Assembly (NCBI GenBank): GCA_965235115.1
Contig: OZ249447.1
Coordinates: 21,080,001-21,144,000, forward strand
DNA from: Laetmonice hystrix
Taxonomy: Eukaryota
Direction of reading: 5' to 3'
DNA length: 64,000 nucleotides
Shown here: positions 16,100-57,064 of the stretch, piece after piece
Numbering within the stretch: the stretch's first letter is position 1
Layout of the letters: each line of letters begins with the position of its first letter
Made by a program: the position numbers and the translations under genes
The notes under the pieces: model-generated
The model's input: the letters and a program-made list of their open reading frames with translations, nothing else
Told to the model about the DNA's origin: nothing
The model's database searches: none

Positions 16100-16174
16100 T
16101 ACGGTCGGTTTTTGTTTTGCAGGTGAGTATACTCTGACTGAGTGACTGATTTATTGAGTTGGGTACGGGTAAGT
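16100..16174 (+). other. Candidate recursive splice site 1 with 46-nt cryptic RS-exon (16123-16168)
   Basis: ggtttttgttttgCAG|GTGAGTat at 16122/16123, branch-like ttgac/cttac at ~16094-16102, downstream donor CGG|gtaagt at 16169. The exon has stops in all three frames. Confidence 0.6.
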
Positions 16175-16430
16175 TTGAAAGTTTTTATAACTTTAAGGAG
16201 GTAAAGTACAATTTTGTAATGTTAAATGGAGCTTGTCAACATATATATTCGATTCATAAGTGCAAGTAGTTTTCTCTGTACTAGAGGACAATATCCTTTG
16301 CAGGCCGAATTCTTTGTTTGAGTCCGACGAGAACATAGGGCAGTGTTGTATGATTTTGTAATGTGACCAAATGAGTATCTCTCGACACGGTCTGTCAGGA
16401 CCATGTGAATGTGAACGCTAGCAGTAATCG

Positions 16431-16500
16431 GTGTGACGTATTGGAGGACGTGGGTTTAGGGTGTGACGTATTGGAGAACGTGGGTTTAGGGTGTGACGTA
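16431..16500. repeat. 30-bp tandem repeat x2.3
   Basis: Unit gtgtgacgtattggag(g/a)acgtgggtttagg. Confidence 0.9.
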
Positions 16501-16602
16501 TCGTCACATTCCTGGCGCCCCATCACGGAGGTGGTGGAGTGGTCGGTCAAGGTTATGGACCTCACTGATAACGGGGATTCCTGTGTGCTGATAGGAGAAC
16601 GT

Positions 16603-16676
16603 TTCCCAGCCAGACCGACCAGAGAGTCGGCCTTGGGGTTCCCAGCCAGACCGACCAGAGAGTCGGCCTGGGGGTT
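16603..16676. repeat. 36-bp tandem repeat x2
   Basis: Unit ttcccagccagaccgaccagagagtcggcct(t/g)gggg. Confidence 0.9.
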
Positions 16677-17102
16677 CTCTACCACCATACCGGCAGGGGT
16701 TAGGACCTCCGAGTTCTTGGGTCACTCAGACCTTGGGAATATTAAGTTACCGCAGATGATATCTGTAATGTAGAATGTAGCACCGTGTAGCAGACTGCTT
16801 AAAACACGAGTTTAGGGAAGCAAACAGTTTCCTATGGCAATATTTAGCGTAATAGGATTTAATCTAGAGATTTAATTTTACCTCAGTGGTTGCTTTTGTT
16901 ATCTCGGCGTAAGCAAATTATACGTTCTACCGCCACCGTTCGTACTATAATAAACGAATCTAGACGTGCATCTCTTGCCTTATGTAAACCGGAGGCACAA
17001 AATTACGTATTTCAATTGCTTTCGGTATAATTATATGAAGGATTCACCTCCTTTCTAAACCTCCACGGCAGCTTACCGAAAGATATTAATTTTCATTATC
17101 AT

Positions 17103-17234
17103 ATGACCTGACCCCATGGCTTGGACGTACAACTCACGCTGAGCATGACCTGACCCCATGGCTTGGACGTAGAACTCACGCTGAGCATCACCTGACCCCA
17201 TGGCTTGGACGTAGAACTCACGCTGAGCATCACC
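17103..17234. repeat. 42-bp tandem repeat x3
   Basis: Unit at(g/c)acctgaccccatggcttggacgta(c/g)aactcacgctgagc. Confidence 0.93.
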
Positions 17235-18049
17235 GGCACTGCCAAGTCTCCCGGGAGGTAGCCGTTTCCCACATAAAAAAAACACTGCTGCCTTGTCAAC
17301 TGACGATCAGACTGAGAAGTCAGAGATTGTTGGGTAAAACGGTCCAGGCTGTGTGGTCTGTCTGATGGGGCCGCCCCCCCCCCCCCCAGTGGTCTCTGCC
17401 CCCCTCAGATGTGGGCAGGGACTGTTGAAGAGCTCGGTGCCATGGTGTGATGACGGGGGCGGAATGGGTGTGTGTGTGTGGGGGGGGGGGGAGTTCCGGC
17501 TCGTGACGTTGTTATTCCGTTGTCATGGAAACTCTGGGATGTGTCACCGCCTGGTGGCGGTTTTGGCAGGTGGAGACAGCTCAGTGTCATGGTCCTTTTA
17601 GTAGTAGCCTTACGACCGCCCGCAATAGAGTGAATATATAGTGTGATCTAACTGGTGCTGTACTTAGTGAACCCGAGTGATCAAACATTGTTTGTTGTTA
17701 TGGCCTAACCAGCAGGTGTTAGTCATCACGGGCGTACATCGTTATAAATTGTTGCTGTGACACACTGCATGGGCACAAGGTCACCTTTAATACTGTGAAT
17801 GATTTAACCAGTGACTTCAGCTCGTAAGAAGAACCGAGTGAGTGCCCACGTTAGCTCGTCTACTGGCTGCAGCATAGAGGCCGTAACTTGCAACCAAGGA
17901 GTCCAAGTGTGGTTGATTTTCTGTACATGTTGTCATGGCAGCCAATTATACCGACTTGTGTTACCAGGAATTCGGTCCCTGCAGTGTTAACCTTGTACAT
18001 GAAGTCCTCCGCCGCCTACTCGTATCAGGAACTCCCACGATACCACAGC

Positions 18050-18506
18050 CATAGAACCGTTCCATTCCCCTAACCCCGACCCAGAGGCTGGAGCAGGCAG
18101 GCTTGGCAGTAGACATGGGTCTCACCATAGAACCGTTCCATCCCCCCAACCCCGACCCAGAGGCTGGAGCAGGCAGGCTTGGCAGTAGACATGGTTCTCA
18201 CCATAGAACCATTCCATCCCCCCAACCCCGACCCAGAGGCTGGAGCAGGCAGGCTTGGCAGCAGACATGGGTCTGACCATAGAACCATTCCATCCCCCCA
18301 ACCCCGACCCAGAGGCTGGAGCAGACAGGCTTGGCAGTAGACATGGGTCTCACCATAGAACCATTCCATCCCCCCAACCCCGACCCAGAGGCTGGAGCAG
18401 GCAGGCTTGGCAGTAGACATGGGTCTCACCATAGAACCATTCCATCCCCCCAACCCCGACCCAGAGGCTGGAGCAGGCAGGCTTGGCAGTAGACATGGGT
18501 CTCACC
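18050..18506. repeat. Minisatellite, 76-bp unit, 6 copies
   Basis: accatagaaccattccatccccccaaccccgacccagaggctgg... recurs at 18124, 18200, 18276, 18352 and 18428. Confidence 0.96.
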
Positions 18507-18759
18507 TGTCTGGGATATCATTGGGCTGTCAGGGTTGGAGACTATGGCGAATTATGTCCTACCTTTCGTTCGGTTGAGCCTTTGTGATGCGTCAGACTCC
18601 TGACTGACTCCAACCTGCCTTGGGGCTGGGGCTAGGGGTGGGGGTGGAGTGGGGTGGGGGTGGCGGTGCCGCACAGGTATGGCAGACCGCGGAAATCCAT
18701 GATTACGTACATACATCGATCGAATGAGGATAAGCTGTGAGACATAATCAGAACGGAAC

Positions 18760-19957
18760 TCCCAGATCAATCTGTGCCGATAAATACAGACTGTGGTGGT
18801 GTAGGAACAGATCATATCTCTAAGGTCAATCTCTGCCGCAGAGTGTGGTGGTGTAGGTACAGATCATATCTCCCAGATCAATCTCTGCCGCAGAGTGTGC
18901 TGGTGTAGGAACAGATCATATCTCCCAGATCAATCTCTGCCGCAGAGTGTGCTGGTGTAGGAACAGATCATATCTCCCAGGTCAATCTCTGCCGCAGAGT
19001 GTGGTGGTGTAGGAACAGATCATATCTCTAAGGTCAATCTCTGCCGCAGAGTGTGGTGGTGTAGGTACAGATCATATCTCCCAGTTCAATCTCTGCCGCA
19101 GAGTGTGGTGTTGTAGGAACAGATCATATCTCCCAGATCAATCTCTGCCGCAGAGTGTGGTCGTGTAGGAACAGATCATAATCTCCCAGATCAATCTCTG
19201 CCGCAGAGTGTGGTGGTGTAGGAACAGATCATAATCTCCCAGATCAATCTCTGCCGCAGAGTGTGGTGGTGTAGGAACAGATCATATCTCTAAGGTCAAT
19301 CTCTGCCGCAGAGTGTGGTGGTGTAGGAACAGATCATATCTCTAAAGGTCAATCTCTGCCGCAGAGTGTGGTGGTGTAGGTACAGATCATATCTCCCAGA
19401 TCAATCTCTGCCGCAGAGTGTGGTGGTGTAGGAACAGATCATATCTCCCAGATCAATCTCTGCCGCAGAGTGTGGTGGTGTAGGTACAGATCATATCTCC
19501 CAGATCAATCTGTGCCGCAGAGTGTGGTGGTGTAGGTACAGATCATATCTCCCAGATCAATCTCTGCCGCAGAGTGTGGTGGTGTAGGAACAGATCATAT
19601 CTCCCAGATCAATCTCTGCCGCAGAGTGTGGTGGTGTAGGTACAGATCATATCTCCCAGATCAATCTCTGCCGCAGAGTGTGGTGGTGTAGGTACAGATC
19701 ATATCTCCCAGATCAATCTCTGCCACAGAGTGTGGTGGTGTAGGAACAGATCATATCTCCCAGATCAATCTCTGCCGCAGAGTGTGGTGTTGTAGGAACA
19801 GATCATAATCTCCCAGATCAATCTGTGCCGCAGAGTGTGGTAGTGTAGGAACAGATCATAATCTCCCAGATCAATCTGTGCCGCAGAGTGTGGTAGTGTA
19901 GGAACAGATCATAATCTCCCAGATCAATCTCTGCCACAGGGTGTGCTCAGATCATAT
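18760..19957. repeat. Minisatellite, ~52-bp unit, ~23 copies
   Basis: Unit cagatcaatctctgccgcagagtgtggtggtgtagg(a/t)acagatcatatctcc, with interspersed junction and indel variants. Confidence 0.97.
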
Positions 19958-22240
19958 GGGATGCTTTTCTTTAATACACCGCGTTCAGGTATAGAAGAAG
20001 AATATAGGCGGAGATTTAATTCCCTGATTTGATATGGCGGTACGGTCTCGTGCGGGGAGTTAGTGTGACAGATAACTGTAGTCAGATAGATGAGTGATGA
20101 TGGCCATTCATCAGGAGTGTGTCTGGACTTCGGTTATTGGTGAGACAATTGGCGCCACTTTGGGAACTTTGGCCTGATGGTAGTATACTAACATATTATG
20201 AATAATTCGCCAAAGGTGAACCTTTCGTTCTTGGACTCGTAGTCCAAGCCTGGGTCGACGGATTATTACTAGGTTTGCCAACAGGTGGCAGGTCAGTCGA
20301 TGAGGTGTGTGCGACCTGTATATCGATACGTAACACAGGCCAACATGATTTCTGGAAACAGTACAATATATGACGCCTTGTCCGCCCAGGTCTGGTCTCT
20401 GAAAGGCCGACGGTACACCAGGGACAGGCTTTCCATCGTCCTCTGACATCAGATCATTCGTCCTCAGGAAACTAAAAAACTTTACTCGATTTATTTTTTT
20501 AACGATGTAGAAAACCGTCACTCTGCCTGCTCATTCCTCATCGTTCTTGAGGACACAAAATGGAATACCGTGACCAAGCCCCAGTTAGTTTAATTTCACA
20601 CATGGATGGCCACCATAGATTTTGTAGGAGCAATATCTGGCGCTCTCCTAAAACAAAACACATCCGTTAATCATTAACTGGGAAAGAAGAACAATGGGAT
20701 CGCTGGTTTTCAAACTGTAACGCAATTTGGTTTATTTAAAACTGAAAATGTAGATGGAGTTTGAAACAGTTGTGGACATGAAACGAGTAACTAATTAAGT
20801 GTGGATGAATGCGCCAGGAATATATGAGTTAAGTTCCACCATCGAATGGCGTTTAAGCTAGATTTAATAATCTAATCCGATTTTGTTATTTTATCGGTTT
20901 TATTAGCATAATAAAGCAGGCTTAATAATCGAATCTGACCTTGTGACTATATCGATTTCAAAAGAATAGAAAACGGGCTGAAATGTAGAAAGTGTTTAAA
21001 ATTATTGAAGCGCAGCAGATAGGAATTGAGTGAATGCATTTCCTTGATTCTGAAGTGCTTACTTCTGAATTTAATAATAAACTCGTTTTCAGTTGTTTCA
21101 CGCGATATATTACTAAGTACTGTTAGAAGTCCTTGGCCTAGTGTATGTGGTATAGCAGTATATGTTTTAGATTTCAGTTTGCATGAAACGGTTTGCATGA
21201 AACGGTTTTAATGGAAGATAGGTCTCTGTAGTCATAAAGCTGAAAGCCATTGGTAATTAGTGATGCTATGTTGATAGGAGGTCTCCTACTAGAACGTAAT
21301 TCAACTAGTATTGGATAATGAATCATTCAGTTGTAGTTCGATATCTGCTGTGAGAGGAATATTTTTCAATCAAGTTGAATCATTATTTTCATGTCACAAC
21401 CTTTTGTTTCGAAATGGAGCGGAATGATTATTTTTTTTAAATATCGCTGAGCTACTGTTGTTATTGTACAGTTGATTTCATTCCGTTTTTTTCCCCATCC
21501 AGTCGCAGCTGTTCTAAACTGCCATTTATAAAAGTAGGTCACACCGATTCAGTTTATACAATATGATTGAGAATCAATAATTGGGGTGTTACAATGAATT
21601 ACAGTGTAATCCAATTCTTGGATTATCTAAGGGATAGTTCTCTCAGTATTTAATTGGATCACACAGTATGAAGTAAACATTATAAAGTCTTGTTGCGCAC
21701 ATAGTAGTTGTACAGTCTGAAATTTAATGTTTTGGGTATGAAATTTAAATATTCCATCTCTTGGAAAGAGGGAAAGATGAAAATGTGCCCATTTTGAGTC
21801 GGAAGATGCTGGAACAAATTTCATTTGAAATTTCCAGCAGATTCCGTTCTGTAACCTTTACGTGCCAGTCATTAGAGAAATTCTATAAATGACAAATTTG
21901 TTTCTGACCCTCAAGTAAGAACTTGACTCCCCATCTTGAGGTCCCGAATATACCCAGAGGTCGGCCCAGAGGATGTCCCTTCCGTCAGAAGGCTTTGTAA
22001 GAGGCTAAACTCGTAGAAGATTAAAGAGATCATTATTAAAATGGGATTAGTGTCAGCCTATGGATGAGTTGTAGGCGTCACTCCCCCGGTAATTACCTCC
22101 AGGCTTACAGTGAGTCCATTTCCCCGAACAGTGAGAAGATCACCGGAAGTTGGGATTAGTGCCAGGGTCTCGGTAGATTATCTTGCCGTGTAATTAATCT
22201 GAGGTTGACGTCGGTTGGCCTTGGCATGTAGGTGATAATC

Positions 22241-22322
22241 AATGTTAGAAACCGAAGAGAAAGAGAAAATGTTAGAAACCGAAGAGAAAGAGAAAATGTT
22301 AGAAACCGAAGAGAAAGAGAAA
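22241..22322. repeat. 27-bp tandem repeat x3
   Basis: Unit aatgttagaaaccgaagagaaagagaa. Confidence 0.95.
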
Positions 22323-24838
22323 CGAGTTAGGATTTAACCGGAAAGATGATGATACCAAATCTTATCTCAATTTTTGTTTTGTCGTAGACGGAATATCTAA
22401 TATCTAGGTAGGTCAGTGTCTGGGCTACCCCTGAACCTCTCTCATAGTGTCTGGCCAATATTATAATAAAATAGAGACGCGCTAGGTGTACCAGGTCCAG
22501 CCAATAACGCGAGTCAATCTCAGAGCCCGCATTGTCAACCTTATACCAGTAATACCAGGATTGGATCGCCGCCTTTCAGCGGCCGGTTCAAGAGACGGAC
22601 AAGGATTGCCTGTACGTTGGAGAAATTGATGTACAGTATAGTCTTTCTTTACCTTTGAGGAATTTATGCCCAGGGCATTATAGGAAGGCCAGACAAAATG
22701 GGATCGTTGAGATAATGTGTTTTTGTCCGACCCGCAAAATGACCACAGGGGCTTTATGTCTCAGGAGTCATCGTTGATATAAGGAGGGGAAAACATCGGT
22801 GAGAACCGATGAGGTCTCGCTACGACGACTTTCTGTGAATGTTTATTACCCGTATCGCCTGCAACGTTTGTTCAGTTACCGCAATTAACTGAAAATAAAG
22901 CCAGGCAACAGTTGCAGCAGCAAAAACAGCAGATAAACCAAAGAACTGCAGAAACTGCAGTCTTCACGGACCTCATCACAGGACCCTTTGTTCATCTGAT
23001 ATTGAAGGCTCAGAATTCCTTACAAAAGTTTTAAGTTGTTTTTTTTTAGCTTCATCATGTTATTGCCATAGGTCAGCAAGAATATCTGACATTGTTCAAA
23101 TGCCAGTAGCTGGCGTGGTGCTATTGAAGTGGGTTATTTTTTTTGGGGGGGGGGGGATACTTTTTTCTCTCTCCCTGGGGGTATCAAATTGAAAGGTCAG
23201 GGCACTCGTATCTTTCTTGGGTAGATATAGTTCATTGCTCCAGGGACTGGCCGGGGTGTGGAGTGTGTGATTACTTGTACAAGGTTAGAAAGGGAATCCA
23301 GTGCAGGTTGACAGAGAATAGTGGTCGGTTCGGAGAAAGGCGCTGAACACTTTGTCCACTTTTCAACTTTGAATGTGTTAGGATTCCGATTGAGAAAAAA
23401 GGCATTGTTGCTCTCATGTGTGTAATCTGAAATGACTAGAAATCTTTAGAATCACTCAGGATTGGTGTAATTGAAATCGTGGCACAGAGCACGATTTGAA
23501 ATGATAACGAATATATATTTAGACATAGAAGCTGTAGCGCGCTATGGCCAGGGCAGATGATAAAAAAGGCTGTCAATGCTTCTTGCCTGAAGCACTGTTA
23601 TTTTCCAGCTCATTGCTAGCTCATTCTCATCAGCTAATGGAGCCTGTGCTTTGGAATGCCACTCGCTGCACCTTTGTGTATTTCATTATAACATTTCCCC
23701 TTAGTCAATCCCAATCCAGAGGGACATAGATTCGTGTCTAGGACGGAGAGAGAGAGAGCGACACTGCCTGTAGCAGTTGCAGGGCCTCAGGGCATTATTC
23801 GTGTAATTGTCTCTTGGTCCCTCGCCACTCTTTATGAATATTTGGTACAAATTACGCAAACCGCAAGGTGACGCCTGCCTTTCTGTTTTTCTTTTCTTTC
23901 CATGTTTCTTTTTCAAACTTTTGTTCATCCCGTAAATGTAGGGTTTTGGGAACGTTCACTTTAACTTCACGATATGAAGACGTATAGGGGTTGAAGACAT
24001 CGCTATTTTTATCTCTCACCATCAGAATGTCAATTAATTGTCGTTTTGTGGATCTATTATAGAATTAATGAGGGGCTAGGCACAGACCAGGCTGGTGGTA
24101 GGTTTCAAGGAAAACTTCTCAACTTCTTTGTGTTTCTTTTATGGTGTGTCCGACACCAGTGCCGGGAATGATCGTATTGGGATTCCTTGTACTCGTCCTT
24201 GGCACCGTTAATTATATTTGAGGGACCCATGAAAATGATGACGAGCAGGGGAACATTTGCTGGTAGGCGAGGGAGAATCTTAAGAACATCCCACCACTTC
24301 CTAACTTGATCACATCCACCACTAATGTAGTTTGTGCAGGAGTGTACATGATAAACGGGTTATTTCACACAAGTTAAAGTATGAATCTACTCTGAAGATG
24401 GTAAACGATGGGGATTCACAATTTATTGATTCCAAGCACACGGCAGATGAGAAAGTGTGATGTGATTAGGTATAGACTTGTGAAACACAAGAGACGATGA
24501 TTATTCAAGAACTGCATTTTTTTTAAACTTTTAAGAGTGAAGAACGAACTATCTTTCAGGTTTGGCAGTAAATAACAGTTTGAGAAATGTGTACATTCTG
24601 TCTCATTTACTCTTGCTGTGTACCGTTGACGTGCGGTCTCCATGAACTGAAGTAGTCGCAGGCGCGGGTCCAGGATTTATTGAAGGGTGGGGTTCAGGGT
24701 CTTCTCAAAGGGCACCGACTGACGGATTTGTTTGTACATAGCCTACAAAACAGCCGCAGATACAGCACTGCAAAGGGTGGACGCCCGGCAGTGTTACACG
24801 TCAAGTTGCGCGAACTGAAATTCACCACATCTATAGCT

Positions 24839-25376
24839 GTGCCGTTGTTCGTGTGCCCTCCGTGCCCGGTGCCGTTGTTCGTGTGCCCTCCGTGCTCGGT
24901 GCCGTTGTTCGTGTGCCCTCCGTGCTCCGTGCCGTTGTTCGTGTGCCCTCCGTGCTCCGTGCCGTTGTTCGTGTGCCCTCCGTGCCCGGTGCCGTTGTTC
25001 GTGTGTGCTCCGTGCCGTTGTTCGTGTGCCCTCCGTGCTCGGTGCCGTTGTTCGTGTGCCCTCCGTGCTCGGTGCCGTTGTTCGTGTGCCCTCCGTGCTC
25101 CGTGCCGTTGTTCGTGTACCCTCCGTGCTCGGTGCCGTTGTTCGTGTGCCCTCCGTGCTCCGTGCCGTTGTTCGTGTGCCCTCCGTGCTCAGTGCCGTTG
25201 TTCGTGTGCCCGCCGTGCCCGGTGCCGTTGTTCGTGTGCCCGTCGTGCTCGGTGCCGTTGTTCGTGTGCCCTCCGTGCTCAGTGCCGTTGTTCGTGTGCC
25301 CTCCGTGCTCCGTGCCGTTGTTCGTGTGCCCGCCGTGCTCCGTGCCGTTGTTCGTGTGCCCTCCGTGCTCGGTGCC
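24839..25376. repeat. Minisatellite, 30-bp unit, ~18 copies
   Basis: Unit gtgccgttgttcgtgtgccctccgtgctc(c/g); one 29-bp unit near 25005 shifts the apparent reading frame. Confidence 0.97.
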
Positions 25377-28300
25377 CAGATGATGTGAAGAAGATGTGAT
25401 TGTGAACGTGTAGAAGTTAGATATGCTTATGTCAGTGTCATCTCATGAAACATGGCTTCGACGGCTGCCGGGACATTAATCCTAACCCTATGAGCTGCGG
25501 AAATAGCTGTAGTCAGGAAATTAACATTTTCTGTAACTGCCGCTCTGGAACTGATAATGATGGGTTGTCTGTCTGATCTTTGATATTAATTATGACCATG
25601 GTGTTACTGAGTGAGGGAGGCAGGGTATGGGGAGGTACACACACAGGCAAAACGTCGCTCAAGAAATGGAGACTTGGCTGAACCGGTCTGATAATAATTG
25701 TCTGGATCACCGAGTCAGGGGTGCGTTTCAAAACCATCGTTTTTCTGTCTTGTATCAAAATCTCCTTGAAAATACATTAATGTTAACGATATACGATATG
25801 TTAAGCACAGGTTGAAACGCACCCCTGTCTCGGCCAATCTTGACCACGGCTCCTGGCAGTAGATGGCGCTACTGGTCGCATGCGTGGACTGACTGAAACA
25901 ATTACATGATCTGTATGGAATTCAGGGTTAGAGTTTATGATACCGACCAGGAATGTCTTGGTTATTAATAATCCTACTTATTGGGCCCTTATCCTCGTCC
26001 GTATATTTTGAACCATAGCCTCTCCCCTGTTATAGATCGCGAGCTAAGCGGCAGGGATGCTATTCGTCAGTCGTTGGCCTCCGTATGGAAGTTCACGCAA
26101 AATGTGACATGTAAAAAGGCTTGCCAGACATACGCTTTTAAGCAGCCGGGCATTTTGGAGAATATTGCACTTTAAGTTGTCACAGGAATGTCAGGACGCG
26201 TTGCCGGCTGCCCGTCTACATTGTTTATGTCATGCAGTGAGGCTCGTCATTTGACTAACGTCTTCTTGTGGTTAGTGTATATCGTCTTGTCATCTCAACA
26301 TGGTGAAAAACCGCCAGCAGCACGGCTCTTGAGGGTTGGTGAGATAAGAACTGACCACCGGGGGATGGCTATGTTATCAGAAATACTGCTAGGGCAATTT
26401 CTGCTGTTGTGGCGAATATCAGGAGTAATGGATGGCAGGCAGACGGCAGACTGGCGTTCCCGTTTCCTGGATGGATGTTTGCTCACTAGGTAGCGCCACA
26501 ATGGCAGCGGCGGTCAACCACGTCGTCGGATGTCATAGTGGTCATCTGTCATGGTCAGCGGTCCTTTCAGGACTGGACTGACTGAAATACCATACACATT
26601 GTGGTATATGTTTGCCAAGTGGGTGAGGCCAGGCGGGGGGCAACCTCCCTGTGGGAAAACCATAAGGCGCAAAGTGGGGGTTACCACGCATTGTGACATC
26701 AAAACGCCTCAATATGTTACATAAATATCGATCTCCATAATGGCTACAAACATAGGAAGATAACCTCCATGATGTCTAGGTTTTATGCATCGTAGTCCGT
26801 AAACCACCGGTTAGTAAACTTTCTGATATTTAAGAAAAAAGTATGTCTTGTTTCCCCTAATTTGACTTTTGAGAAGGAAATTAATTGCTATCCATTGAAT
26901 CGAACTAAAAAAGACTGCAGATTTCTAATGTGAATTATGTGTGACTGTGACCCGGATAAATATGGCTGATTTTACAGCCTGGTGTGGTTTGCCAGGAGAG
27001 CTGCAATCAGATGTAAATACCCTGCCATGTAAACAATAGGATGCCCCCGGTGTGATTTTTGTCCCTTCTTTCTGCATGATTGTTTATATAACACAGATAT
27101 TCTGGTTCTGAGAAGAGATCTCTGATGACAATTTACCCCGGTCGGTTTTTCTCCATCTAGAACGGTGGTTTAATATTAGCCACGTGAAGGCGAACGTCTT
27201 CACGCGGCGCTATCACGTGACTGACGTGTACTGGGCGGCCCCCTGGCGGCAGGCGGTGAAGACGTGTTGCTGTTGACAGGTCGCGAACCACGTATTGCCC
27301 TGTTATGTTTGCTGCCCTGCCCTGTGACACCCGAGGCATTGCGACATGTTTTAGTGACATGGGCGCCCTTCCGCTGCACTATCATGTCAACAGTTTGGGT
27401 TACTCCCAAACCTGGAAGATTCAATCTAGGACCACAAGCACGCACTCAATGGCTACTTTACTGCTACTGTGCATCATGGGGACATGGTTAGGCCAGTCTG
27501 GAGAGGAGACCCCTCTCTTCCAAGTAAAAGGGTTTTACAGGGTTGGAGGTTAATCAGACCACAGCTATTTTACTCTCTGACCTCCCAGTCTGGGCAAAGT
27601 TTTCAGGTCCATTTCTAATGTGTTCATGTTGTGAGTTTGGAGAAAACTAGTTCACACTTCTTTACCCCAGTGGCAAAATGTTCGTGTCAAAGTCTGCTGT
27701 GGTAAAAATAATGGGGAGGTTGAACCACCAGTCAGCCTGATGGTCTAATAGTACAAGGCCAGTTTATGTTACTGTGAATTAGGTAGCAGTCTCAGGCAAT
27801 TTACAAAATGTAAAGTTCTACATGGTTGCGACATGAAAAAGTCTAGGTGGAGGAATTACAAGAACTGTTTGTATCCGAGGGGATGGGATTGCTTGTTTTA
27901 TGGGAGTTACATACGTCCTTATTCTATTCTATTACTGACAAATAGACCATCTCTTTTGAAGCCATTTGCCATAATTACTGTCTGACAGAAGTTGTTAAAG
28001 TAGCAAACCAGCTGCAGCTGGTAAAGTACATGTGCCATTGTTTGGCGACGTTGCAGTGAGATTTCTTTCAGAAGTTCCTAAAAACCTTTTTCCTTTAACG
28101 TTAGCTGTGTGGAGGCAAGACGACCCCTTATACCAGCCGGCGATCGTCATTGAGAAGTAATACCGCCGATTACATTTTACGACGTTAACCCAAGCCAATA
28201 CCATGTTACTGAATTATATTTTTCTTTGGTTGAAGGATCAGGTTTACCTCCCAGAGTAGGCCGTGTAACTATGGTGATATGCAGACGCTTTGGCAAAGGT

Positions 28301-30332: not shown

Positions 30333-30538
30333 NNNNNNNNNNNNNNNNNNNNNNNNNNNNNNNNNNNNNNNNNNNNNNNNNNNNNNNNNNNNNNNNNNNN
30401 NNNNNNNNNNNNNNNNNNNNNNNNNNNNNNNNNNNNNNNNNNNNNNNNNNNNNNNNNNNNNNNNNNNNNNNNNNNNNNNNNNNNNNNNNNNNNNNNNNNN
30501 NNNNNNNNNNNNNNNNNNNNNNNNNNNNNNNNNNNNNN
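30333..30538. other. Assembly gap (206 N)
   Basis: Run of N. Confidence 0.99.
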
Positions 30539-41800: not shown

Positions 41801-42326
41801 GAATGGACCAGTGTTAATGTTACAATATCTATAACACTACCCTGTGATTGGTTATATATGTCTGGACACGTCTGTGACGGTAGGATCTGGATGACAGGGG
41901 TGTACAACGTTAGGCTGTAAATACTCTATATAATATCTGAGATTGCGGGACAAAATACTGCAACTAGGAGTCGGTTTGCCCTATTCAGTTTGAATAGTCA
42001 CGCAACAAAAGTTACTATTAAAACCTAGAGGCGAGTGATTCATATCCTTTAGAATTCCGTCTAAAGAATTCTACGTCTTATACCAAGTTTTTGTTACACT
42101 ATTAAAGTATAAACACGTCAACACACACGTCCTCAATCATGTAATATGGACATGGGGGATGGGCTGCAAACATTTTCCAGTCGGCATTATTAATTTTTTA
42201 AACCTAGTGTAATTGCAGTAAGTGCGCTGTCTAGCACAACCTAGGTGTGCTGCATTAGTCAGAAGTGTGGGGCTTCAGGTGAGGACAAACCGGAGTCAGT
42301 GAAGCAATCAGTCAGTGTATAATCAT

Positions 42327-47300: not shown

Positions 47301-48206
47301 CCAGCAGCAGCAGCAGCTGACGAGATAGTTGGCTGTCACTATAGTGTGGGACAGTTGGTGGGCGGTGCACGGGGCAGCGGGAGATGATCATCACACAGTG
47401 CCTTCATGACACTCAGTCAGCAGGCGAGCGTGATTTTAACGCCACCAAGAGGCGCGCATGCATGGTTCCCGTCCTTGTGAAGGTGAAAACACTGATGACG
47501 ATGTGTCACGCCAGCAAATCCGAACTCCTGCAATAGGATTGGTCGCTGATATATGTATGTGCTCAGTAGACTGTGACACACTTTGTTGTTGGTGACCTTG
47601 ATGCTTGGTCCCTGCACATTAGAGCGAGCACGACTTGATGGAGTGAGACAGCAGAGAGTTGAGACTACGCGTCGGTCGGTCGGAGTATATAAAGGTAACT
47701 CAGCCACAAGGGGGTCTGCCAAGCCTTCAAGAGACCGGGACTTGTGTCTGGACGTCAGCCGAATGTGCAGGCCTCTCGACGGGTGATTGTCTGTGAAAGG
47801 ACTTGGCTGTAAAGGCTGGAGCAGGAGGTGGGTCTCCCGAGTATCAGGGTCCCCTTTCATGTAGTGTCTCGGTGTAGAAGGGAGTCCACAACATACACGG
47901 AGCGTCATCAAAAGGTACGGGTGTGTGTTCCAGCGAGCAGAGACAGCGACCGTGGCTGGTCAGAGCAGACAGACATTGGCCGGAGTGGGGATGACCCTGT
48001 CAACAAGGATGGACGACTCCAGGACACTGTGGGAATAACTAGCGATGATAGCGTGGGACAGACTACCAGCACAGATAAGTGGGGCTTGGACCGACTGACA
48101 ATAACAAGTTCAGTAAGTGGGGCTGGAAGAGAGGACGTCGAAACCCTGCCCCAGAAGGCACGACCGCGCGATACTGATCAGGTAACTGGAAACTTTCACT
48201 GAGTGA

Positions 48207-50066
48207 CCAGACTCCATTGGAGACAAACGACACACCTGGCTTCAGACAGGCACCAAGAGGGAGGTATTCGGCCTGGCCACATGCCTCCTTGGCATGTTTG
48301 CTTATAAACTCAGGTGTTCGCCTTAAAGGAGCCGGGTCAACATTGAGTGACATGCCGATTCTCATCACACTTGGATATACATGTACACAAATCTTGTTTT
48401 AAAGGAATGTACACTGTCACGTTGACGGCGGATCGCACTGTTTCTGAGAGGCTTGATTGAAACATGGTTGACGGCTTGCCAAGCTGGTGAAAAAGTGGCA
48501 TGTTTAGGACCATCAGAACAGCAATTTGCCGTGTTGGCCGACGTGCTCGGACACGGCCGAGTGACTGACGGGGTGTTGTTAAAGTTCAAGCCTCAGTAAA
48601 GTGACCAGGTGCGAGCAGAAGCGGCAAGGTGCACCTCAAGGCAGACATCCTTGGGTACGGATTGGGACAGGCAAGGCTACCTAAACATCTCTAAAGTGTC
48701 GCCGATGCTAAGAATCCAGTGGGAGGACATACACTACAGAGATAGAGACAGAGAACCGAGACAGACCTGCAAAGATTACACGTGAAGGGAAGCCTTAGGA
48801 ATGACATGAGCGGCTAACAAAGACTTTGGGGTGGGCCGACCTCTTTCAGCAACAGAGTGGGCCATTGGCTAGGCGACCGGACCCGTGCACGTGGGAGTTT
48901 GTCAGGAGGATGCTATGCTGTGAGAACACCTAGAGTAGACGGGCAGTGCTTAAAAAATACATTTAGAACCGAGCCAAGGGACCTTTCAGGTCGACTGACT
49001 GGCCGTGCATTCTGAACAGGCACAGTGGTTGGCACTGGGCGACCGTGATACATGTGTTATATATGTGGCGACCAGGCCGATACCTGGTAGCGTGATACAA
49101 TCTGGCCGGACAGAGGCATGCTGATGGGCATTTTTTCTGCTGGCTTCCATGAGGGCACATGTGGAGACCCGATCTCCAGGCTGTTTTGCTACATAACAAG
49201 GTGAAGGAGTGGGACGTTTACCTGCCACGTCCACCGACTGCAGTATCCACCGGATACATTCGCCTCCAGTTGTTTAGGGGAGTTGGCCAGCTCAGTTTCG
49301 CAACTCGCCACGGGGTAGCATCACGCGATCCTTGGCCCATTTACACAGGCGTTAACCTGAGCACAGACCTGCATTTAGTTTTTTTACCCCTCCCCTCCGG
49401 ACCATTTCATTTGATCCTGGGAGAAACAACTTCAGTCGAGGAAAGAGACATCCTTGTTGACATGGGTTGTTGTTGTGTTGACAAAAATTAAAGTGGCGGC
49501 CCAGAACTGGTGAACACAAAAAGTCACCAGTGCTGGTTGGACGCACGTATAAAACGACCTGTTGTTGTCAGGGTGGCTGACGTAGAGAGAGAAAGTTGTA
49601 GCTCTATGCACCTTCACAGCTACAACTGACACCTAAGAAAAAAAACTGTGTGCACTCCGATCCTAGCCCGCTGCCAAGTGGGGTCACACGTGGACCTTTT
49701 TAAGATCCAAACATCAACACACCTGTGGCTTGTCTTTTCAGGGCGAGACCGTCGCCGAGTTCAGAGGCCTGCAAGTTGGTCTTTGACCCTGACGCGAGGC
49801 CCTGGCGGCAGAACGGTGAACATCTGCCTTCAGGTATTGCGTATGTCGGGCAGGTGAGAGGCACCTTCTGCATCAACAGGTGCCAGTCAGGCAGATGCTG
49901 CTCGAGCACTTTGTCCACAGCATCCACTCTGGACAGTAGCCGTACAGCAACACTGAAAAAGGTCTTTGAACCTGCTGCCAAATTGTTTCCCGTATACAGC
50001 ACAATGATAAAGGCCGCTAAACTTGCGACAAGTTACATGTATGTCAGCCCAGGGCAAAACAGCTAA
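48207..50066 (+). pseudogene. Possible decayed coding relic, family unassigned
   Basis: Frame 48207-48785 (192 codons, 4 internal stops) and frame 48841-49491 (~217 codons, 4 internal stops) give protein-like text such as RIALFLRGLIETWLTACQAGEKVACLGPSEQQFAVLADVLGH. No confident homology. Confidence 0.2.
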
Positions 50067-50398
50067 TTTGTGACTTGGGGTCAACAGCTGATGAATAATA
50101 GTGTACAGGGGTGAGAAAAAAACCCGACAAGGAAATCTTCAGTGTGGAGTGGGTACATGGTGGTGACAAGTGTTTAGATTGCTGTGCAATATTATGTCCC
50201 CGGTGGAGTAGAGCAGTGTACAGTGTGTTGGTTGGAAGTGGTTAAAAACGGGAGAGCCACTCGTCAGGCGGATACTGAGGTTAGGTTGTGTGTGTGTGAC
50301 CTTCTCCACACATAGTATACCTCACCTGGGTGGTATACCTCACCTGGGTGGTATACGTGAGGTCCTGTTGTCCATCGACAAGTCGCGATACACCTAGA

Positions 50399-50628
50399 GA
50401 CAGTACATCTCAAGGTCACACGACAGTACATCTTAAGGTCACACGACAGTACATCTCAAGGTCACACGACAGTACATCTCAAGGTCACACGACAGTACAT
50501 CTCAAGGTCACACGACAGTACATCTCAAGGTCACACGACATTACATCTCAAGGTCACACGACAGTACATCTCAAGGTCACACGACAGTACATCTCAAGGT
50601 CACACGACAGTACATCTCAAGGTCACAC
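50399..50628. repeat. Minisatellite, 23-bp unit, 10 copies
   Basis: Unit gacagtacatctcaaggtcacac. Confidence 0.97.
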
Positions 50629-53600
50629 TGCATATATATATAGCCTGAAAACAGGGACACTAGGATATAATAGTGGTGCGGCGTCGGCTCCATTTACCAC
50701 CGCCGACGGCACCACCGGGAACCACCTGCCTGGGCGGATATCTCTGCCAGAAATAGCAGTAAGAGTGCTTCTATAAACCGGGGAATTTTATGACCAGAAA
50801 TAGATATTAACTTTTTTGACAAATGAATCATCAAATAAACACTTTCAGATTACAACAAAACGTGATATAAGTAAGATATGCTATAGTGTTCACGAGGACG
50901 AGGTAGACTATTGTGTGCGGTGGCGATGTATTTGTTGTTGACACATATTAAGGAGTGTTGACACATATTAAAGAACATGTCGGAGTGTTGGAGGTACAGG
51001 GTCACCTGGCTAGGACAACATGAGTGATGACACTGAGGCATTGGTGATAACACTAACCAAACCAACTTGTTCAACGAGAGAAAAGTTTGGTCTCCAATTC
51101 ACACACACACATTGGATTACAACCCCTGCCTGAATGTGTGCACAACACAGAAAACTGACCAGTGGTATTTCACACATACGGCATTTTGTTTCTGTGCTGT
51201 GAGAGCAGACTGATACAGTGATATGTGTGGTGTCCACTGAGTGTCAAGTGGTTGAGGTGACCACTGAGTGAGAGCATATAGTGTGTTGGAATCACTTCAC
51301 GATCCACATCCGTCATAATGCCTAAGTTACGCCGGAGTTGGTCGTGGTCGCCGTCCTGTGTGGCTCCACAGGCCACCTTTAGCGATGCATGGTATATTTT
51401 CGGTAAGTTTTTGTTCCATTCAACTCAAGCACCCGCCGAGCTGGCTCTCGAGCTGGCTCTCGACGGGTTGTTAATTGTGTGTTTTCTCCTTGGCCTTGTG
51501 GCAGTCTTCTTGATGACACAAGCGTGGTGATATGATATTATTATGTCAGGTAATTGACATGCTGTGGATTTCATACAGAATGTGACATCAGAATAACCTG
51601 CTTTAATCACTGATAAATTTGATCAGGTAAAGTTATTCTAGAATTTAGGTAGGACCAGAAGTAAAGAAATGACAAGGAACCTGAAAGTACAAGTGACCGA
51701 CGCTAACGTGGATGATGAATTTAATTACATCCTAAGAATGTCAAGTATGTGTGCCAGCCCAGAGATGAAAATAAACATGCCAGCCTGACCGTCTCAGAAT
51801 TATGTTGGCAAAAGTCACATTGGCAAATAGCATAATTAACCTGCTGGCGGAATTCACAAAGGATATATCTGAGAAACTCTTTCCTTGTACCTCACCACAC
51901 ACTAGCGTGAGGTCGAAGATAATATAGCCAGTTGTACAGAATCTATTGTTGTCAGGCCAGGTGTCGATGTTCCGTGCGTGAATCTTGTTGACCTGAGAGA
52001 AAATTGCTGCTCTGTTAGCTAGCGGTAAACTCTCAAAGTCCCAAGGTTTCAATTTAGGTTTCACTCCATTCAGTATCAGCTTCTTCACGTTCAATACATG
52101 TTGGCAAAGTCTCAAGTACCATCTTAATATCTGGTCGCCGTTATGTTTTGAATGAAATACGGGAAACAATAAGGTATGGCATATTGTAGCCAGATGGAAC
52201 ACGGCCCACTGGGCAGCCTTCACACACATCACTGCCTGGTGATACTCATGACAACTCGAACCAAACGACCTCGTCTAACATGTCACTTTAGTAGGAAACT
52301 CGAGCGGCGGCGTAGAATCAGTCTATGCACCAGCACACGCTGGCTCACAGGGTCATTTCCGTAAATTACCAGAGGAGCACAAAAAGTTGTCAGTTACGCT
52401 GTTACAGAATTGCATCACATACACAAGAGTAAATGTCAGGGCCGGGGGGTTCGAACTCCAGGCATTATTTGTGTGAAACAAACGGAACAGATGATGACAA
52501 TTGATGTGGCTATGTTTAATGGGGTTTCCGGTGTATCTGTTGAAGCCTACCAGCAATTTTCCTATGCGTGGACATTGTGATACCCCATAGCTAAGTGTGT
52601 ATGTACTGGACCGTGTTGTAATACATGTTGTACTCCCCTTTCACATCATTGCCCTGATGTGAAGGTTCATCACTTTAATGTAGGTGGTATTATAGACCGT
52701 CCAACATATCCTATCCAACTTATCCTAACTAGGAAATGCCCCTGGATCCTCTGTGAACGGACTGAGGTGTCCCAGCCGGTGGAACTGTATGACATTGTGG
52801 CTGTGTTAGGGGATCTAGGCGAACAACATATACCGGTAATTTTTTCCTGCCCGGTTGGTGTTTAGCAGAGAGCCAGGTCGGGAGGACTCTCCCCCGCCCC
52901 CTGCTCACAGCTCCTCATTCAGTGTGACAATGTCCCACTTGGTTGGATGGACGGACGGAAGGCTGCAGGCCATGGTCAGCCTAATTCCTACAGCTGACAT
53001 TATCATGGCACAGTCCTCATGATGGGCAGGTCAAGGTTTGTAGGTGGGTGGGTTGTCGGTTCAAGTGCGGGCCGTACCAACTGGGTGATACGATGGGCGA
53101 AAATAATGGTACCCATCGTGGAAACTTGTCAGGGGAGATATTCGTCATTCTCTGCCAATGGGTGCATCTTGATGGTTTCATAGACAGATTTCAGACCGGT
53201 GGAGCGGATGGGGGGGGGGGGGTTCTTGCTTTGGTGTGGTCAAAATCAAGCAGACGCTCAGAATGATGTGTCTCTTGGGAAATGTTTGATTTAAAGATGA
53301 GGTGGAGGAGTTTTTGCTAATTATACAAATATTTCTGAAACTTTGATGAGGACGTGTTTCACTTATAAACCGTTGTACTGAGACCGAAATGTACTGGTAT
53401 ATGAGGTAGACTATCATGAGTACACAGGTAGGTAGATAAGTTACGCTGCACATGTTGTTCTCATTTTCTTGCTGAGATAGAAAGGGAACTTTTGACATGA
53501 GAAAACCGGCGGTCAACTGATCTGTCTCCTTTAGGATACAAATTGGACAGGAATGGGAGGGGGAGGGGGGGGGGGTCGCATGCGACCAGCTGACTCTGGG

Positions 53601-55328
53601 GGCATGCGACACACAGCTGGCGCCACCTTGCGACGGTTTTTCAGATGGGGGAAATTCTTATCAACCAGAACAACGTGTAGGTTTGACAAGGACGCAGGTT
53701 TACTTCTAACATTGAATGAGGGGTTCATGAAGTGTGGAGGTAAGGGGGGGGACAACTTGAAAGTAACATGAGAGAGCCCTGTTTATTTTGTAACGCTTCA
53801 GGACATTTTCTCACGTGGAAAGTAAGTAAAAACTGCTTTTAAATAATAAAAACAAAAGAGGGGGAATATGCTTTTGAAAATATAAAAGGTATATGTAAAT
53901 CTGATATGGTTGAAAAGGGCCGGCGCTTTGGTTGCCTGCCTGGTTCTGTAGGAGGACAGAGTCCCGCTCATCTAGTTCTTCTGTAACAGCTGGGAACAGG
54001 TTTCGATCCCAAACCCACGTCACATCCCATCTGCTGTGGATAATTGCCCCCCCCCCCCCCGCAACGGAAGCAGCCGCGACGCCTGGTCAGGAAAGGTCCT
54101 CGCTAACTTTACCATGGAGTAGTGTTATTAATATACTGACTGGAGGGAGGGAGGGCGGCCGGGGTCAGGGTGGGTGTGGCGGGGTGAGGTGAGGGATGAC
54201 CGGTGACAGCTGTGGCCGCACCAACTCGAGGACCCACACCTTGGACAATGATATGAAACAAAAGGACGGGCAGCCCGTGTACCGTGTCGGAGTAGGAGAA
54301 GAAGACTGGTTTGGTGTGAGTGCACCTCTGGTCCGCGGACTGCCAGGGTGGGAGTATACGCTTGGTCGGTGCAGGGGATCCCAAGGATTAGTAGCACCTC
54401 GCTGGGAACTACCAAGAGTTGCTCCAGATTGAGAATACTCCATGTTGTAGCGTGAGTTGGAAGACGCCAGAGTATCCTATTCGTTAAGTTCCCAGTGAGT
54501 GAACCAAAGGATGGGTTCGTATAGGTCTGGGGACGTACGAGTTGATAGTGATGTATGCCAACATCACTAATGTGGAGTTATGATCAGTCTCAGGTCGACT
54601 AGGTGGACTGTCGGAAACTAAATGGTCCAAACTGGAAAATACGAGCTTGGACTGAGTACGTATCAATACGTGAACTGAAGTGGGCATGGAAAGCTGAAGG
54701 GAACCCTTCAATTTGAACACAAACGAAGCGAAAAGCATCAAGTCTTGGTGCTTAACGATCTTTTTGTCAAGTCTTCAAGGTCCAGTACATGTTTGAACAG
54801 AACTGTAAAATGTTGTTACTTCATCAGTCAATAACAAAAAGAAGCTACTCGTCTTCTGTTGGGACCCGTCAGGTCGGGGCAAAGGAGCTGTAACCTCATC
54901 ATAGACGTGAGTCTGTCCCAATTCCTGGCGGATCACGGCGGAGGGAACGGGAGAGTGGATTTATCCTGTGGGTTATCGTCGCGAGAGAGTCGGTGGGATC
55001 TTGTAGCCAGGGTGGAGTCGGTGTGACCGGTCAGAAGTGGTCACTCAGTCACCATGATGTGTCACAATGCCGCGAAGGTGTTCACTGTGGAGGACGTGCA
55101 GTTAGCTGGAGCTGTCACAGGTGACCCCTCTCATCATGTACACAGGTGTTGACAAAATATCCTGATACACATGTAGTTAGTTATACAGTACACAGAGCTG
55201 GTGGAGATGAGAAGGTATAATATCAGAAGACAAGGTCCATGTATGTAGATCGTTTAGATAAATCATGGTCTCTAACAGCATATAAGAGGCAAACGGTGGT
55301 TGACACGAGGCATGGTTTTCAATGTCCA

Positions 55329-55968
55329 GTTTGTCTAATCACTCTCAGATACACGTCAGAGTTTGTCTAATCACTCTCAGACACACGTCAGAGTTTGTCT
55401 AATCACTCTCAGACACACGTCAGAGTTTGTCTAATCACTCTCAGACACACGTCAGAGTTTGTCTAATCACTCTCAGACACACGTCAGAGTTTGTCTAATC
55501 ACTCTCAGACACACGTCAGAGTTTGTCTAATCACTCTCAGACACACGTCAGAGTTTGTCTAATCACTCTCAGACACACGTCAGAGTTTGTCTAATCACTC
55601 TCAGACACACGTCAGAGTTTGTCTAATCACTCTCAGACACACGTCAGAGTTTGTCTAATCACTCTCAGACACACGTCAGAGTTTGTCTAATCACTCTCAG
55701 ACACACGTCAGAGTTTGTCTAATCACTCTCAGACACACGGCAGAGTTTGTCTAATCACTCTCAGACACACGTCAGAGTTTGTCTAATCACTCTCAGACAC
55801 ACGGCAGAGTTTGTCTAATCACTCTCAGACACACGTCAGAGTTTGTCTAATCACTCTCAGACACACGGCAGAGTTTGTCTAATCACTCTCAGACACACGT
55901 CAGAGTTTGTCTAATCACTCTCAGACACACGTCAGAGTTTGTCTAATCACTCTCAGACACACGTCAGA
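55329..55968. repeat. Minisatellite, 32-bp unit, 20 near-identical copies
   Basis: Unit gtttgtctaatcactctcagacacacgtcaga; 640 bp equals 20 units. Confidence 0.98.
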
Positions 55969-57064
55969 ATACATAGAATTGTCTATATCCTGGCCTTCTG
56001 AAGGAGTATTGCGAAATCCAGTGGTGCGAATATTTTGTCGTTCCCTGCCTTATCTACAAGAAGAATATGGTGCTTACGGTATTTTTACCCCCAGAATTAG
56101 TTAGGAATCAAGCCAGTGATGCGAATAGTTACTCACTCCTAGCCTTATCAAGAAGATGGTGCGTAGGATATTTTTACTTACAGAATTAGTTAAGAGTCAG
56201 GCAATGCAAAGAATTAGCCGTCAGAAACGACTCGGAGCCTGGCGATACCTTGGGCGTGAACTGCAGGTCATAAACGACGGGCTAGGTTTATGATGGCAGT
56301 GAGTGGCTGTGAATGGTGGTGTAATGAAGCTTTGATGGACGACTAATGGCCAGTTTATAGGGATATGTACTCAGAGATCATAAACATCATAGCTTCACAA
56401 CCCAACAACACGTACCGCCATCCCAGCAAGCCCAGACTCAGCGCAGTATGATGTGTTCTACCGAGAATGGTTCAATCTATACTCTGAGGTTACAGTCGGA
56501 CTGTTAATAATATAACAGTCCCGAGAAATGGAGTCAGAATTCCATGTCACTACTTGAAATAACGGCTTGTGAGGAAATTGATCCGTCCTCATTTTTTCAT
56601 TTTTTTTTTCAAAAGACCAGGTTCAGAGTAGGTACATTACATTTACAGTCTAGGACAGAAGAGTGTCAGATTGGACTTTATAAGGCCTTTTCTAATTCAT
56701 CCATGTCCACTTATAAAGAATCAGAGATTCAATAAGAATGATAACGAATAGATAGTTACTGAAAGTTACGGACAACTAGAAGCAGGAAGCTGGACGAATA
56801 CAGCCTGTACAAGATTTAGGGTCAGAAGTTCAGAGGTGCCACCCACGACCCGACATGTCTGTCGGGTGTAAACCTCATTGACTGACTCCCGTGTCAAGTG
56901 CCCCAATTGCTTTCAGCAAAACTAGTGTGTCATCTATTTAGGTACTGGTGTTAAACGAGGCCAGGTCCTGTTTTTTTGGTAACAAAATGTACACCCAAAC
57001 TTTGAGCTGACATTTTTATTCTGACAGTAAGATACTAAAGGTCCATGCTTTGCGTTTTTTTCAG

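What the first reader, a model, noticed from the sequence alone, without database searches (positions are those of the whole stretch)
16100..57064. Putative recursive-splicing (ratchet) system subdividing a >57-kb srGAP intron
Seen: the 10-mer CAGGTGAGTA occurs at 16120 and 34180, on the srGAP sense strand, each time right after a U-rich pyrimidine tract and followed by a second donor 31-46 nt later. I found no other CAG|GTGAGT by eye. A rough uniform-composition expectation for this 10-mer is ~0.06 per 64-kb strand. The sites cut the interval into steps of >=16, ~18 and ~23 kb. Established: 3'SS/5'SS junctions drive recursive splicing in long Drosophila introns (Ubx; Duff et al. 2015), and in long vertebrate neuronal genes they act through stop-containing RS-exons (Sibley et al. 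2015). Inference: this animal uses RS-exon-type recursive splicing in srGAP. I do not know of this being described for srGAP or for non-insect invertebrates.
Basis: partly seen in the sequence, partly recalled or inferred. Interest (0 to 1): 0.88.

Follow-up and report, generated by a model that had tools for sequence, protein, structure and literature searches.

The report
Likely recursive splice sites, srGAP intron
The huge first intron of this invertebrate's srGAP gene carries three sense-strand sites where an intron-end signal directly abuts an intron-start signal, so it is probably cut out in steps (recursive splicing, a known mechanism), but no RNA intermediates could be checked.

Summary
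CAGGTGAGTA occurs only at 16120 and 34180, both on the srGAP sense strand. Each follows a pyrimidine tract and has a second donor 46 or 31 nt downstream.

Coding exon 1 lies 59 kb upstream of the window, so the intron is 116,097 nt. It holds a third site of the same build 12.3 kb before the window start.

RNA-derived contigs join exon 1a directly to exon 2. They also reveal an alternative upstream exon 1b, 3.4 kb before the window, joined to exon 2. No mini-exon appears in these junctions.

Genome-wide, TTTNYAG|GTGAGT occurs only 269 times, three of them here. Non-repeat copies cluster on one strand (12 clusters against 3). In 54 sampled sites a second consensus donor is 11-fold enriched 25-66 nt downstream (P = 1e-7). 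That is the cryptic RS-exon build known from Drosophila and vertebrates.

Recursive splicing is therefore the best reading, at about 0.58. It is unproven: no splicing intermediates, saw-tooth coverage, lariats or cross-species conservation could be tested.

The mechanism is known. The animal is a spiralian with no named close relative, and the gene is a new case. The scan has noted similar site series in other long introns of this genome (ephrin and others).

The parts
16100..16128 (+). Candidate ratchet point s1. Pyrimidine tract and CAG (ends at 16122) abut GTGAGT (starts at 16123).
   Evidence: It has 13 of 20 pyrimidines and is single-copy in the genome.
16123..16168 (+). Cryptic RS-exon of s1, 46 nt, closed by the consensus donor CGG|GTAAGT at 16169. 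Read after exon 1a it gives GGT GAG TAT ACT CTG ACT GAG TGA, an in-frame stop.
   Evidence: The +46 donor falls inside the genome-wide +36..+57 band.
34160..34188 (+). Candidate ratchet point s2. Pyrimidine tract and CAG (ends at 34182) abut GTGAGT.
   Evidence: It has 15 of 20 pyrimidines. The site itself is single-copy; only a microsatellite about 300 nt downstream recurs elsewhere.
34183..34213 (+). Possible cryptic RS-exon of s2, 31 nt, closed by the weak donor AAG|GTATTG at 34214. It has an in-frame TGA after exon 1a.
   Evidence: The donor matches only 6 of 9 consensus positions, so this part is the weaker one.
1..57064 (+). The part of srGAP intron 1 that lies in the window. The intron starts at window coordinate -59032 after exon 1a (116,097 nt) or at -3384 after exon 1b (60,449 nt). 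A third candidate site, s0, lies at -12308 (ttgtccatcttttatag|GTGAGT, G000:C13:21067692).
   Evidence: exon 1a and s0; junction contigs; exon 1b.
30333..30538 (.). Assembly gap inside the intron, between s1 and s2. It affects only the s1-s2 distance.
34810..34949 (.). Assembly gap inside the intron, 628 nt downstream of s2. It affects only the distance from s2 to exon 2.
57065..57248 (+). srGAP coding exon 2 (F-BAR/FCH region, ..MRQQLGDQLKCLD..). The intron before it is in phase 1.
   Evidence: RNA contigs of run X5 cover exactly 57065-57248, with loose ends at both borders.
62698..62866 (+). srGAP exon 3.
   Evidence: The loose end behind 57248 reads ACGGGACATGTGGCC..., which is 62698 onward.
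63386..63448 (+). srGAP exon 4 (CRQIGVDSHEEIIKVLNELQN).
   Evidence: read in frame against the orthologues.
63738..63890 (+). srGAP exon 5 (TMKTYHLYHGESKQAEVKLRYLESQ...).
   Evidence: read in frame against the orthologues.

Best explanation
The long first intron of srGAP is most likely removed in steps by recursive splicing at cryptic RS-exons. Three sense-strand sites (s0 at -12308, s1 at 16122, s2 at 34182) each combine a 3' splice site (pyrimidine tract plus YAG) with a consensus 5' splice site (GTGAGT).

Inferred path: the spliceosome defines a short cryptic exon (about 56, 46 and 31 nt) using the acceptor and a downstream donor. Exon 1a (...AAAG) is joined to the site. This rebuilds AAG|GTGAGT, a 9-of-9 match to MAG|GTRAGT. 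That donor outcompetes the weaker cryptic-exon donor (8/9, 6/9 and 6/9 by my count), so the cryptic exon leaves with the next intron piece. The 116-kb intron would then go in pieces of about 46.7, 28.4, 18.1 and 22.9 kb. Transcripts from exon 1b would use only s1 and s2.

Shown: the motifs, their strand, the intron borders, the exon 1a-exon 2 and exon 1b-exon 2 junctions in RNA contigs, and the genome-wide architecture. Inferred: that the sites are actually used, and the order of steps. s1 is the strongest candidate; s0 and s2 are less sure.
For: - Motif and context are confirmed.
- In the 116-kb intron there are 3 sense against 0 antisense sites with at least 13 of 20 pyrimidines plus YAG|GTGAGT.
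- TTTNYAGGTGAGT occurs only 269 times in 627 Mb, against 193 for the reversed control. Three of them are in this intron, where local Markov models expect 0.03-0.06.
- My hand tally of the full list, with repeat copies removed, gives 12 same-strand clusters within 100 kb against 3 opposite-strand pairs. About 4.6 of each are expected.
- In 54 non-repeat sites, GTRAGT lies +25..+66 nt downstream 12 times, against 12 times in the other 25 kb. That is 11-fold, binomial P = 1e-7. All twelve lie at +36..+57, and s1 is at +46. This matches the roughly 50-nt cryptic RS-exon of Drosophila ratchet points (PMC8605326).
- RNA contigs join exon 1a and exon 1b straight to 57065, with no mini-exon.
- All three mini-exons carry an in-frame stop after exon 1a (and direct reading).
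- G>C skew on the sense strand starts near exon 1a and runs through the intron.
Against: - No RNA intermediate, saw-tooth or lariat could be examined.
- With an a-priori motif the excess is modest, P about 0.02-0.06.
- The strict pattern YYYYYYNYAGGTRAGT shows almost no genome-wide excess: 427 including tandem copies, against 343 for the control.
- The TTTS sub-pattern that includes s1 shows none: 106 against 100.
- The sense strand is G+T-rich, which by itself favours the motif about 3-fold over the antisense strand and can inflate same-strand clustering.
- s0 and s2 lack a GTRAG donor in the expected band.
Confidence: 0.58

Rival explanations
1. Chance or unused cryptic motifs. The three sites are fortuitous juxtapositions on a G+T-rich sense strand, and the intron is removed in one step.
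For: The a-priori test is only marginal. The strict motif has almost no genome-wide excess. The TTTS sub-class shows none. The composition of the sense strand raises the expectation about 3-fold. Some motif copies elsewhere are plainly repeat-borne.
Against: Three of only 269 genome copies fall in one intron, all on the sense strand, against an expectation of 0.03-0.06. The third was found by prediction in unseen sequence. The class as a whole carries a positioned second donor, and s1 has it.
Confidence: 0.2
2. Ordinary alternative or poison cassette exons, or the donors of further alternative 5' exons. The 31-56-nt exons are sometimes included, giving an early stop and mRNA decay or a changed 5' UTR, rather than serving stepwise intron removal.
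For: The gene does use an alternative upstream exon inside this intron (exon 1b). The mini-exons have both splice sites and in-frame stops. A short ORF (MCMYNVIFLFS) reads into s2 in the right phase. After exon 1b the rebuilt donor TAC|GTGAGT (7 of 9) is weaker than the cryptic-exon donor of s1 (8 of 9), so inclusion is conceivable.
Against: Only two upstream junctions to exon 2 appear in the RNA contigs, and neither contains a mini-exon. The RNA-type run X5 held none of the sampled words around s1. An ordinary cassette exon has no reason to begin with a consensus donor. No start codon reads into s1.
Confidence: 0.17
3. Repeat- or transposon-derived motifs with no splicing role.
For: A dispersed repeat family carries TTTACAG|GTGAGT at 99% identity on several contigs (L057, L059, L063, L074). 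Tandem arrays on C29, C30 and C8 also carry the motif.
Against: The stretches around s1 and s2 are single-copy in the genome. s0, s1 and s2 match neither each other nor the other 60 sites sampled.
Confidence: 0.03

Closest known systems
Drosophila intronic ratchet points with cryptic RS-exons (Hatton 1998, Burnette 2005, Duff 2015, Joseph 2018; summarised in PMC8605326 and bioRxiv 10.1101/006163)
   Same: - A juxtaposed (Y)n-YAG|GTRAGT on the sense strand of a very long intron.
- Several sites per intron, tens of kb apart.
- A short out-of-frame cryptic exon of about 50 nt closed by a weaker donor.
- The cryptic exon is absent from mRNA.
   Different: - The donor is GTGAGT rather than the fly's preferred GTAAGT.
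- The host is a spiralian, not an insect.
- Use of the sites is not shown by RNA.
- The genome-wide excess of the motif is modest (269 against 193), far from the 20-fold sense-over-antisense excess reported for fly long introns (PMC2773006).
Vertebrate RS-exons in long neuronal genes (Sibley 2015, Blazquez 2018; cited in PMC8605326 and PMC6110456)
   Same: - A long axon-guidance-pathway gene.
- An RS-exon defined by a downstream donor.
- A premature stop if the RS-exon is included.
- A possible dependence on which upstream exon or promoter is used (exon 1a rebuilds AAG|GTGAGT, exon 1b rebuilds TAC|GTGAGT).
   Different: No evidence here for promoter-dependent inclusion. No paper in the searched library reports recursive splicing for an SRGAP gene.
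Computed ratchet-point enrichment in long introns of non-insect invertebrates (Shepard et al. 2009, PMC2773006)
   Same: A sequence-only inference that ratchet-type sites accumulate on the sense strand of introns over 50 kb in an invertebrate outside the insects (sea urchin).
   Different: That study used annotated intron sets and no cryptic-exon criterion. Here one gene is dissected, and the positioned second donor is shown genome-wide in a different clade.

Membership tests
Recursive splice site (ratchet point with cryptic RS-exon) | A pyrimidine tract plus YAG directly abutting GTRAGT, on the sense strand, inside a long intron | tested here: met
Recursive splice site (ratchet point with cryptic RS-exon) | A cryptic exon of about 50 nt closed by a downstream 5' splice site | tested here: met
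   s1 has GTAAGT at +46. s0 has GTAAAG at about +56 and s2 has GTATTG at +31; both are weak. The genome-wide band enrichment has P = 1e-7.
Recursive splice site (ratchet point with cryptic RS-exon) | The rebuilt donor at the site is stronger than the cryptic-exon donor | tested here: met
   My count of matches to MAG|GTRAGT gives 9/9 after exon 1a, against 8/9 (s1), 6/9 (s0) and 6/9 (s2). After exon 1b it is only 7/9. No calibrated splice-site scorer was available.
Recursive splice site (ratchet point with cryptic RS-exon) | The cryptic exon is absent from mature mRNA | tested here: met
   RNA contigs join exon 1a and exon 1b directly to 57065. Contigs drop rare forms, so low-level inclusion is not excluded.
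Recursive splice site (ratchet point with cryptic RS-exon) | Splicing intermediates: upstream exon joined to the site, saw-tooth intron coverage, lariats from the site | not testable with these tools
   No raw RNA reads are on record for this animal.
Recursive splice site (ratchet point with cryptic RS-exon) | The AG|GT junction is conserved in related species while the cryptic exon body drifts | not testable with these tools
   The only near relative found (exon 2 95% identical, 188-kb ENA contig) has no DNA served. The Capitella gene model is compact at 8 kb. Other orthologues are not on record.
Recursive splice site (ratchet point with cryptic RS-exon) | Sense-strand enrichment over the antisense strand and over chance | tested here: inconclusive
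   This intron has 3 against 0. Genome-wide there are 12 same-strand clusters against 3 opposite-strand pairs. Strand composition bias can explain part of this, and the strict motif shows little excess.
Vertebrate-type stop-containing RS-exon | An in-frame premature stop if the RS-exon is included | tested here: met
   After exon 1a (phase 1, G), s0 reads GGT GAG TGA, s1 reads ...ACT GAG TGA and s2 reads ...ATG AAG TGA (and direct reading). This is weak evidence, because a stop within 10-18 random codons is common.

The most novel reading that the evidence does not exclude
This spiralian runs a genome-wide programme of recursive splicing based on cryptic RS-exons in its long, mostly neural, introns. 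In srGAP the programme would be coupled to promoter choice. After exon 1a the rebuilt donor wins and the cryptic exons vanish. After the internal exon 1b the weaker rebuilt donor (TAC|GTGAGT) lets the s1 cryptic exon in, sending part of that isoform to decay. That would be a promoter checkpoint like the one proposed for vertebrate RS-exons, and it would date the logic to the bilaterian ancestor.
Probability: 0.15. Interest if true: 0.6.

Novelty: new member of a known kind. Interest (0 to 1): 0.42.

Why it matters
Recursive splicing is established by experiment only in Drosophila and vertebrates. A clear case in a spiralian would support the view that removing long introns through cryptic RS-exons is ancestral to bilaterians. 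This one comes with a genome-wide sequence signature and a defined, testable gene: three sites, two alternative first exons and known junctions. It would also give annotators a rule for recognising such sites. It does not reveal a new mechanism.

Tried and rejected
- **RNA runs.** Two searches found no run recorded as RNA. Run X5 proved to be RNA-type only when laid on exon 2.
- **Relatives.** The 188-kb contig of a near relative has no DNA served. Lineus, Lingula and Owenia srGAP products are not on record. The Capitella model spans only 8 kb, so it has no long intron to compare.
- **Exon 1 in the window.** A search found nothing. It lies upstream.
- **Species identification.** Mitochondrial COX1 has 12 TGA codons, so no usable stop-free query could be made. 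HSP70 places the animal only among spiralians, with 77-79% identity to annelid, nemertean, brachiopod and mollusc proteins.
- **Repeat origin of the sites.** Rejected.
- **s1 as a coding alternative first exon.** Rejected, because no ATG lies between the last in-frame upstream stop and the site.
Full report
**Observation.**
- The 10-mer CAGGTGAGTA occurs exactly twice in the window, at 16120 and 34180, both on the + strand. Shuffles give a mean of 0.22 for both strands.
- YAGGTRAGT adds only one site, on the - strand.
- The contexts are ggtttttgttttgcag|GTGAGTA and tctttctattttcag|GTGAGTA.
- A consensus donor CGG|GTAAGT lies 46 nt after the first junction. A weak donor AAG|GTATTG lies 31 nt after the second.
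- Both stretches are single-copy in the 627-Mb assembly.
- The two assembly gaps (30333-30538 and 34810-34949) are intronic. They touch none of the motifs or junctions, so they make only the step lengths approximate.

**Gene structure.**
- srGAP runs on the + strand. Exon 2 is 57065-57248, exon 3 is 62698-62866, exon 4 is 63386-63448 and exon 5 is 63738-63890.
- Exon 2 starts in phase 1, so a coding exon 1 must exist. It is not in the window.
- In 200 kb fetched upstream it lies at window coordinate -59099..-59033. It encodes MALERRPKKEKEMTYEFEGQMK plus a G, with donor AAAG|GTAAGC. Intron 1 is therefore 116,097 nt.
- Run X5 behaves as RNA. Its contigs cover only 57065-57248.
- One X5 contig continues upstream of exon 2 with ...AATGACCTATGAATTCGAAGGACAAATGAA, which is exon 1a.
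- A second X5 contig continues with GCTCCAAGCGTGAGCCCTATTGGATCATAC. This maps uniquely to G000:C13:21076586-21076615, window coordinate -3385.
- That sequence is the end of a GC-rich alternative upstream exon, exon 1b. It has its own ATG (MSAVSAPAAVMEDRATT...REPYWII) and donor TAC|GTAAGT.
- The end behind 57248 reads into exon 3.
- So transcription starts upstream of both sites, and no mini-exon is present in the junctions seen.
- Sense-strand G>C skew begins near exon 1a and holds through the intron.

**A third site.** Scanning the whole intron gives three sense-strand sites with a good pyrimidine tract plus YAG|GTGAGT. These are the two reported and a new one at -12308, ttgtccatcttttatag|GTGAGT, with 16 of 20 pyrimidines. 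No comparable site lies on the antisense strand. The pieces would be 46.7, 28.4, 18.1 and 22.9 kb. Weaker candidates (CAG|GTATGT at -45829 and CAG|GTGAAT at -26455) might subdivide the first piece.

**Chance.**
- With an a-priori definition (at least 12 of 20 pyrimidines, YAG|GTRAGT) the window's + strand expects 0.33 and has 2, P about 0.06. The intron expects about 0.6 and has 3, P about 0.02.
- The post-hoc pattern TTTNYAGGTGAGT occurs only 269 times in the genome, against 193 for the reversed control. Local Markov models expect 0.03-0.06 in this intron.
- The excess over control sits in the sub-patterns with A or T at -4: 83 against 48 and 80 against 45. It is absent with C or G: 106 against 100.
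- A strict six-pyrimidine pattern shows little excess: 427 including tandem copies, against 343.

**Genome-wide class.**
- I tallied the full list by hand and removed repeat copies. Neighbours within 100 kb form 12 same-strand clusters against 3 opposite-strand pairs, with about 4.6 of each expected.
- The clusters include a second triple at C13:22239114/22266732/22303667.
- Strand composition bias could explain part of this, since it gives a 3-fold sense-over-antisense expectation.
- The stronger result uses 54 non-repeat sites fetched with 250-nt flanks. A second consensus donor GTRAGT lies at +25..+66 twelve times, against twelve in the remaining 25 kb. That is 11-fold, P = 1e-7. For GTRAG the counts are 20 against 39, P = 3e-8.
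- All twelve GTRAGT hits fall at +36..+57.
[quoted passage not shown] It cannot come from composition, because the flanks of the same strand are the control.
- s1 (+46) belongs squarely to this class. s0 and s2 have only weak donors.

**Mechanism.**
- The inferred path is as follows. Exon definition of the cryptic exon comes first. Exon 1a is then joined to the site, which rebuilds AAG|GTGAGT. That donor (9 of 9 consensus positions) beats the cryptic-exon donor (8/9, 6/9, 6/9 by my count). The cryptic exon is then removed with the next piece.
- Inclusion would give an in-frame stop in all three cases (and direct reading).
- After exon 1b the rebuilt donor is weaker (7/9), which leaves room for promoter-dependent inclusion. 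That is speculation.

**What is missing.** Intermediates, saw-tooth coverage and lariats could not be examined. Conservation could not be tested.

**Context.**
- The animal has invertebrate-type mitochondrial TGA codons.
- Its HSP70 is 77-79% identical to annelid, nemertean, brachiopod and mollusc proteins, with no named close relative. Its srGAP N-terminus is about 50-56% identical to those of Capitella, Lingula and molluscs. It is a spiralian.
- The open literature searched has no report of recursive splicing in molluscs or annelids or for SRGAP genes.
- Ratchet-motif enrichment in long introns was computed for the sea urchin in 2009 (PMC2773006).
- Earlier notes of this scan list similar site series in other long introns of this genome. 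I did not check those loci, but my genome-wide test agrees with them.

**Verdict.** This is a probable but unproven recursive-splicing case: a known mechanism in a new clade and gene. Confidence is 0.58 and interest is moderate.

Noticed in passing
L001:6480-6615 (G000:C13:21076480-21076615; window coordinate -3520..-3385): An alternative upstream coding exon 1b of srGAP lies in a GC-rich stretch inside intron 1 (MSAVSAPAAVMEDRATTSCGIGHIARTASFRNSLRRSKREPYWII, donor TAC|GTAAGT). An RNA contig joins it directly to exon 2. Only its last 85 nt are covered, so whether it is a first exon is not shown.
   Followed up: partly
G000:C13:22239114, 22266732, 22303667 (+ strand; L038-L040): A second same-strand triple of TTTNYAG|GTGAGT sites lies 1.1 Mb downstream of the window, spaced 27.6 and 36.9 kb. 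Their pyrimidine counts are 18, 12 and 15 of 20. Second donors lie at +39, +42 and +32/+66.
   Followed up: partly
L057, L059, L063, L074 (C18:5808463, C18:18356466, C7:18416480, C10:1987568): A dispersed repeat family, 99% identical over 412 nt, carries ttgtgatttggattacgtgtgtttttacag|GTGAGT. It is a young mobile element that gives false positives in ratchet-motif scans. Tandem arrays on C29:14950067-14950604, C30:1129390-1129737, C8:1170558-1171907 and C1:19017247-19018039 do the same.
   Followed up: partly
window 14900-15980, 24680-25400, 42250-43320, 57340-57960: Long tandem repeat arrays inside the srGAP introns give spurious long ORFs in several frames. One example is the roughly 40-nt unit gcaggtcctgttgtagtgttggaggacgtgtt just after exon 2.
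   Followed up: no
window 56300-56965: The DNA contigs of runs X1, X2 and X4 carry a second haplotype with 10 substitutions and 4 indels in 665 nt, so heterozygosity is very high.
   Followed up: no
G000:C35:4760-6100 (L021): Contig C35 is the mitochondrial genome. COX1 has 12 in-frame TGA codons (Trp).
   Followed up: partly
window coordinates -56000 to 64000 compared with -188000 to -68000: Sense-strand G>C skew of 0.05-0.13 starts near exon 1a and persists through the intron. The 120 kb upstream is near zero. One 12-kb bin at about -32 kb reaches 0.40, probably a repeat.
   Followed up: no
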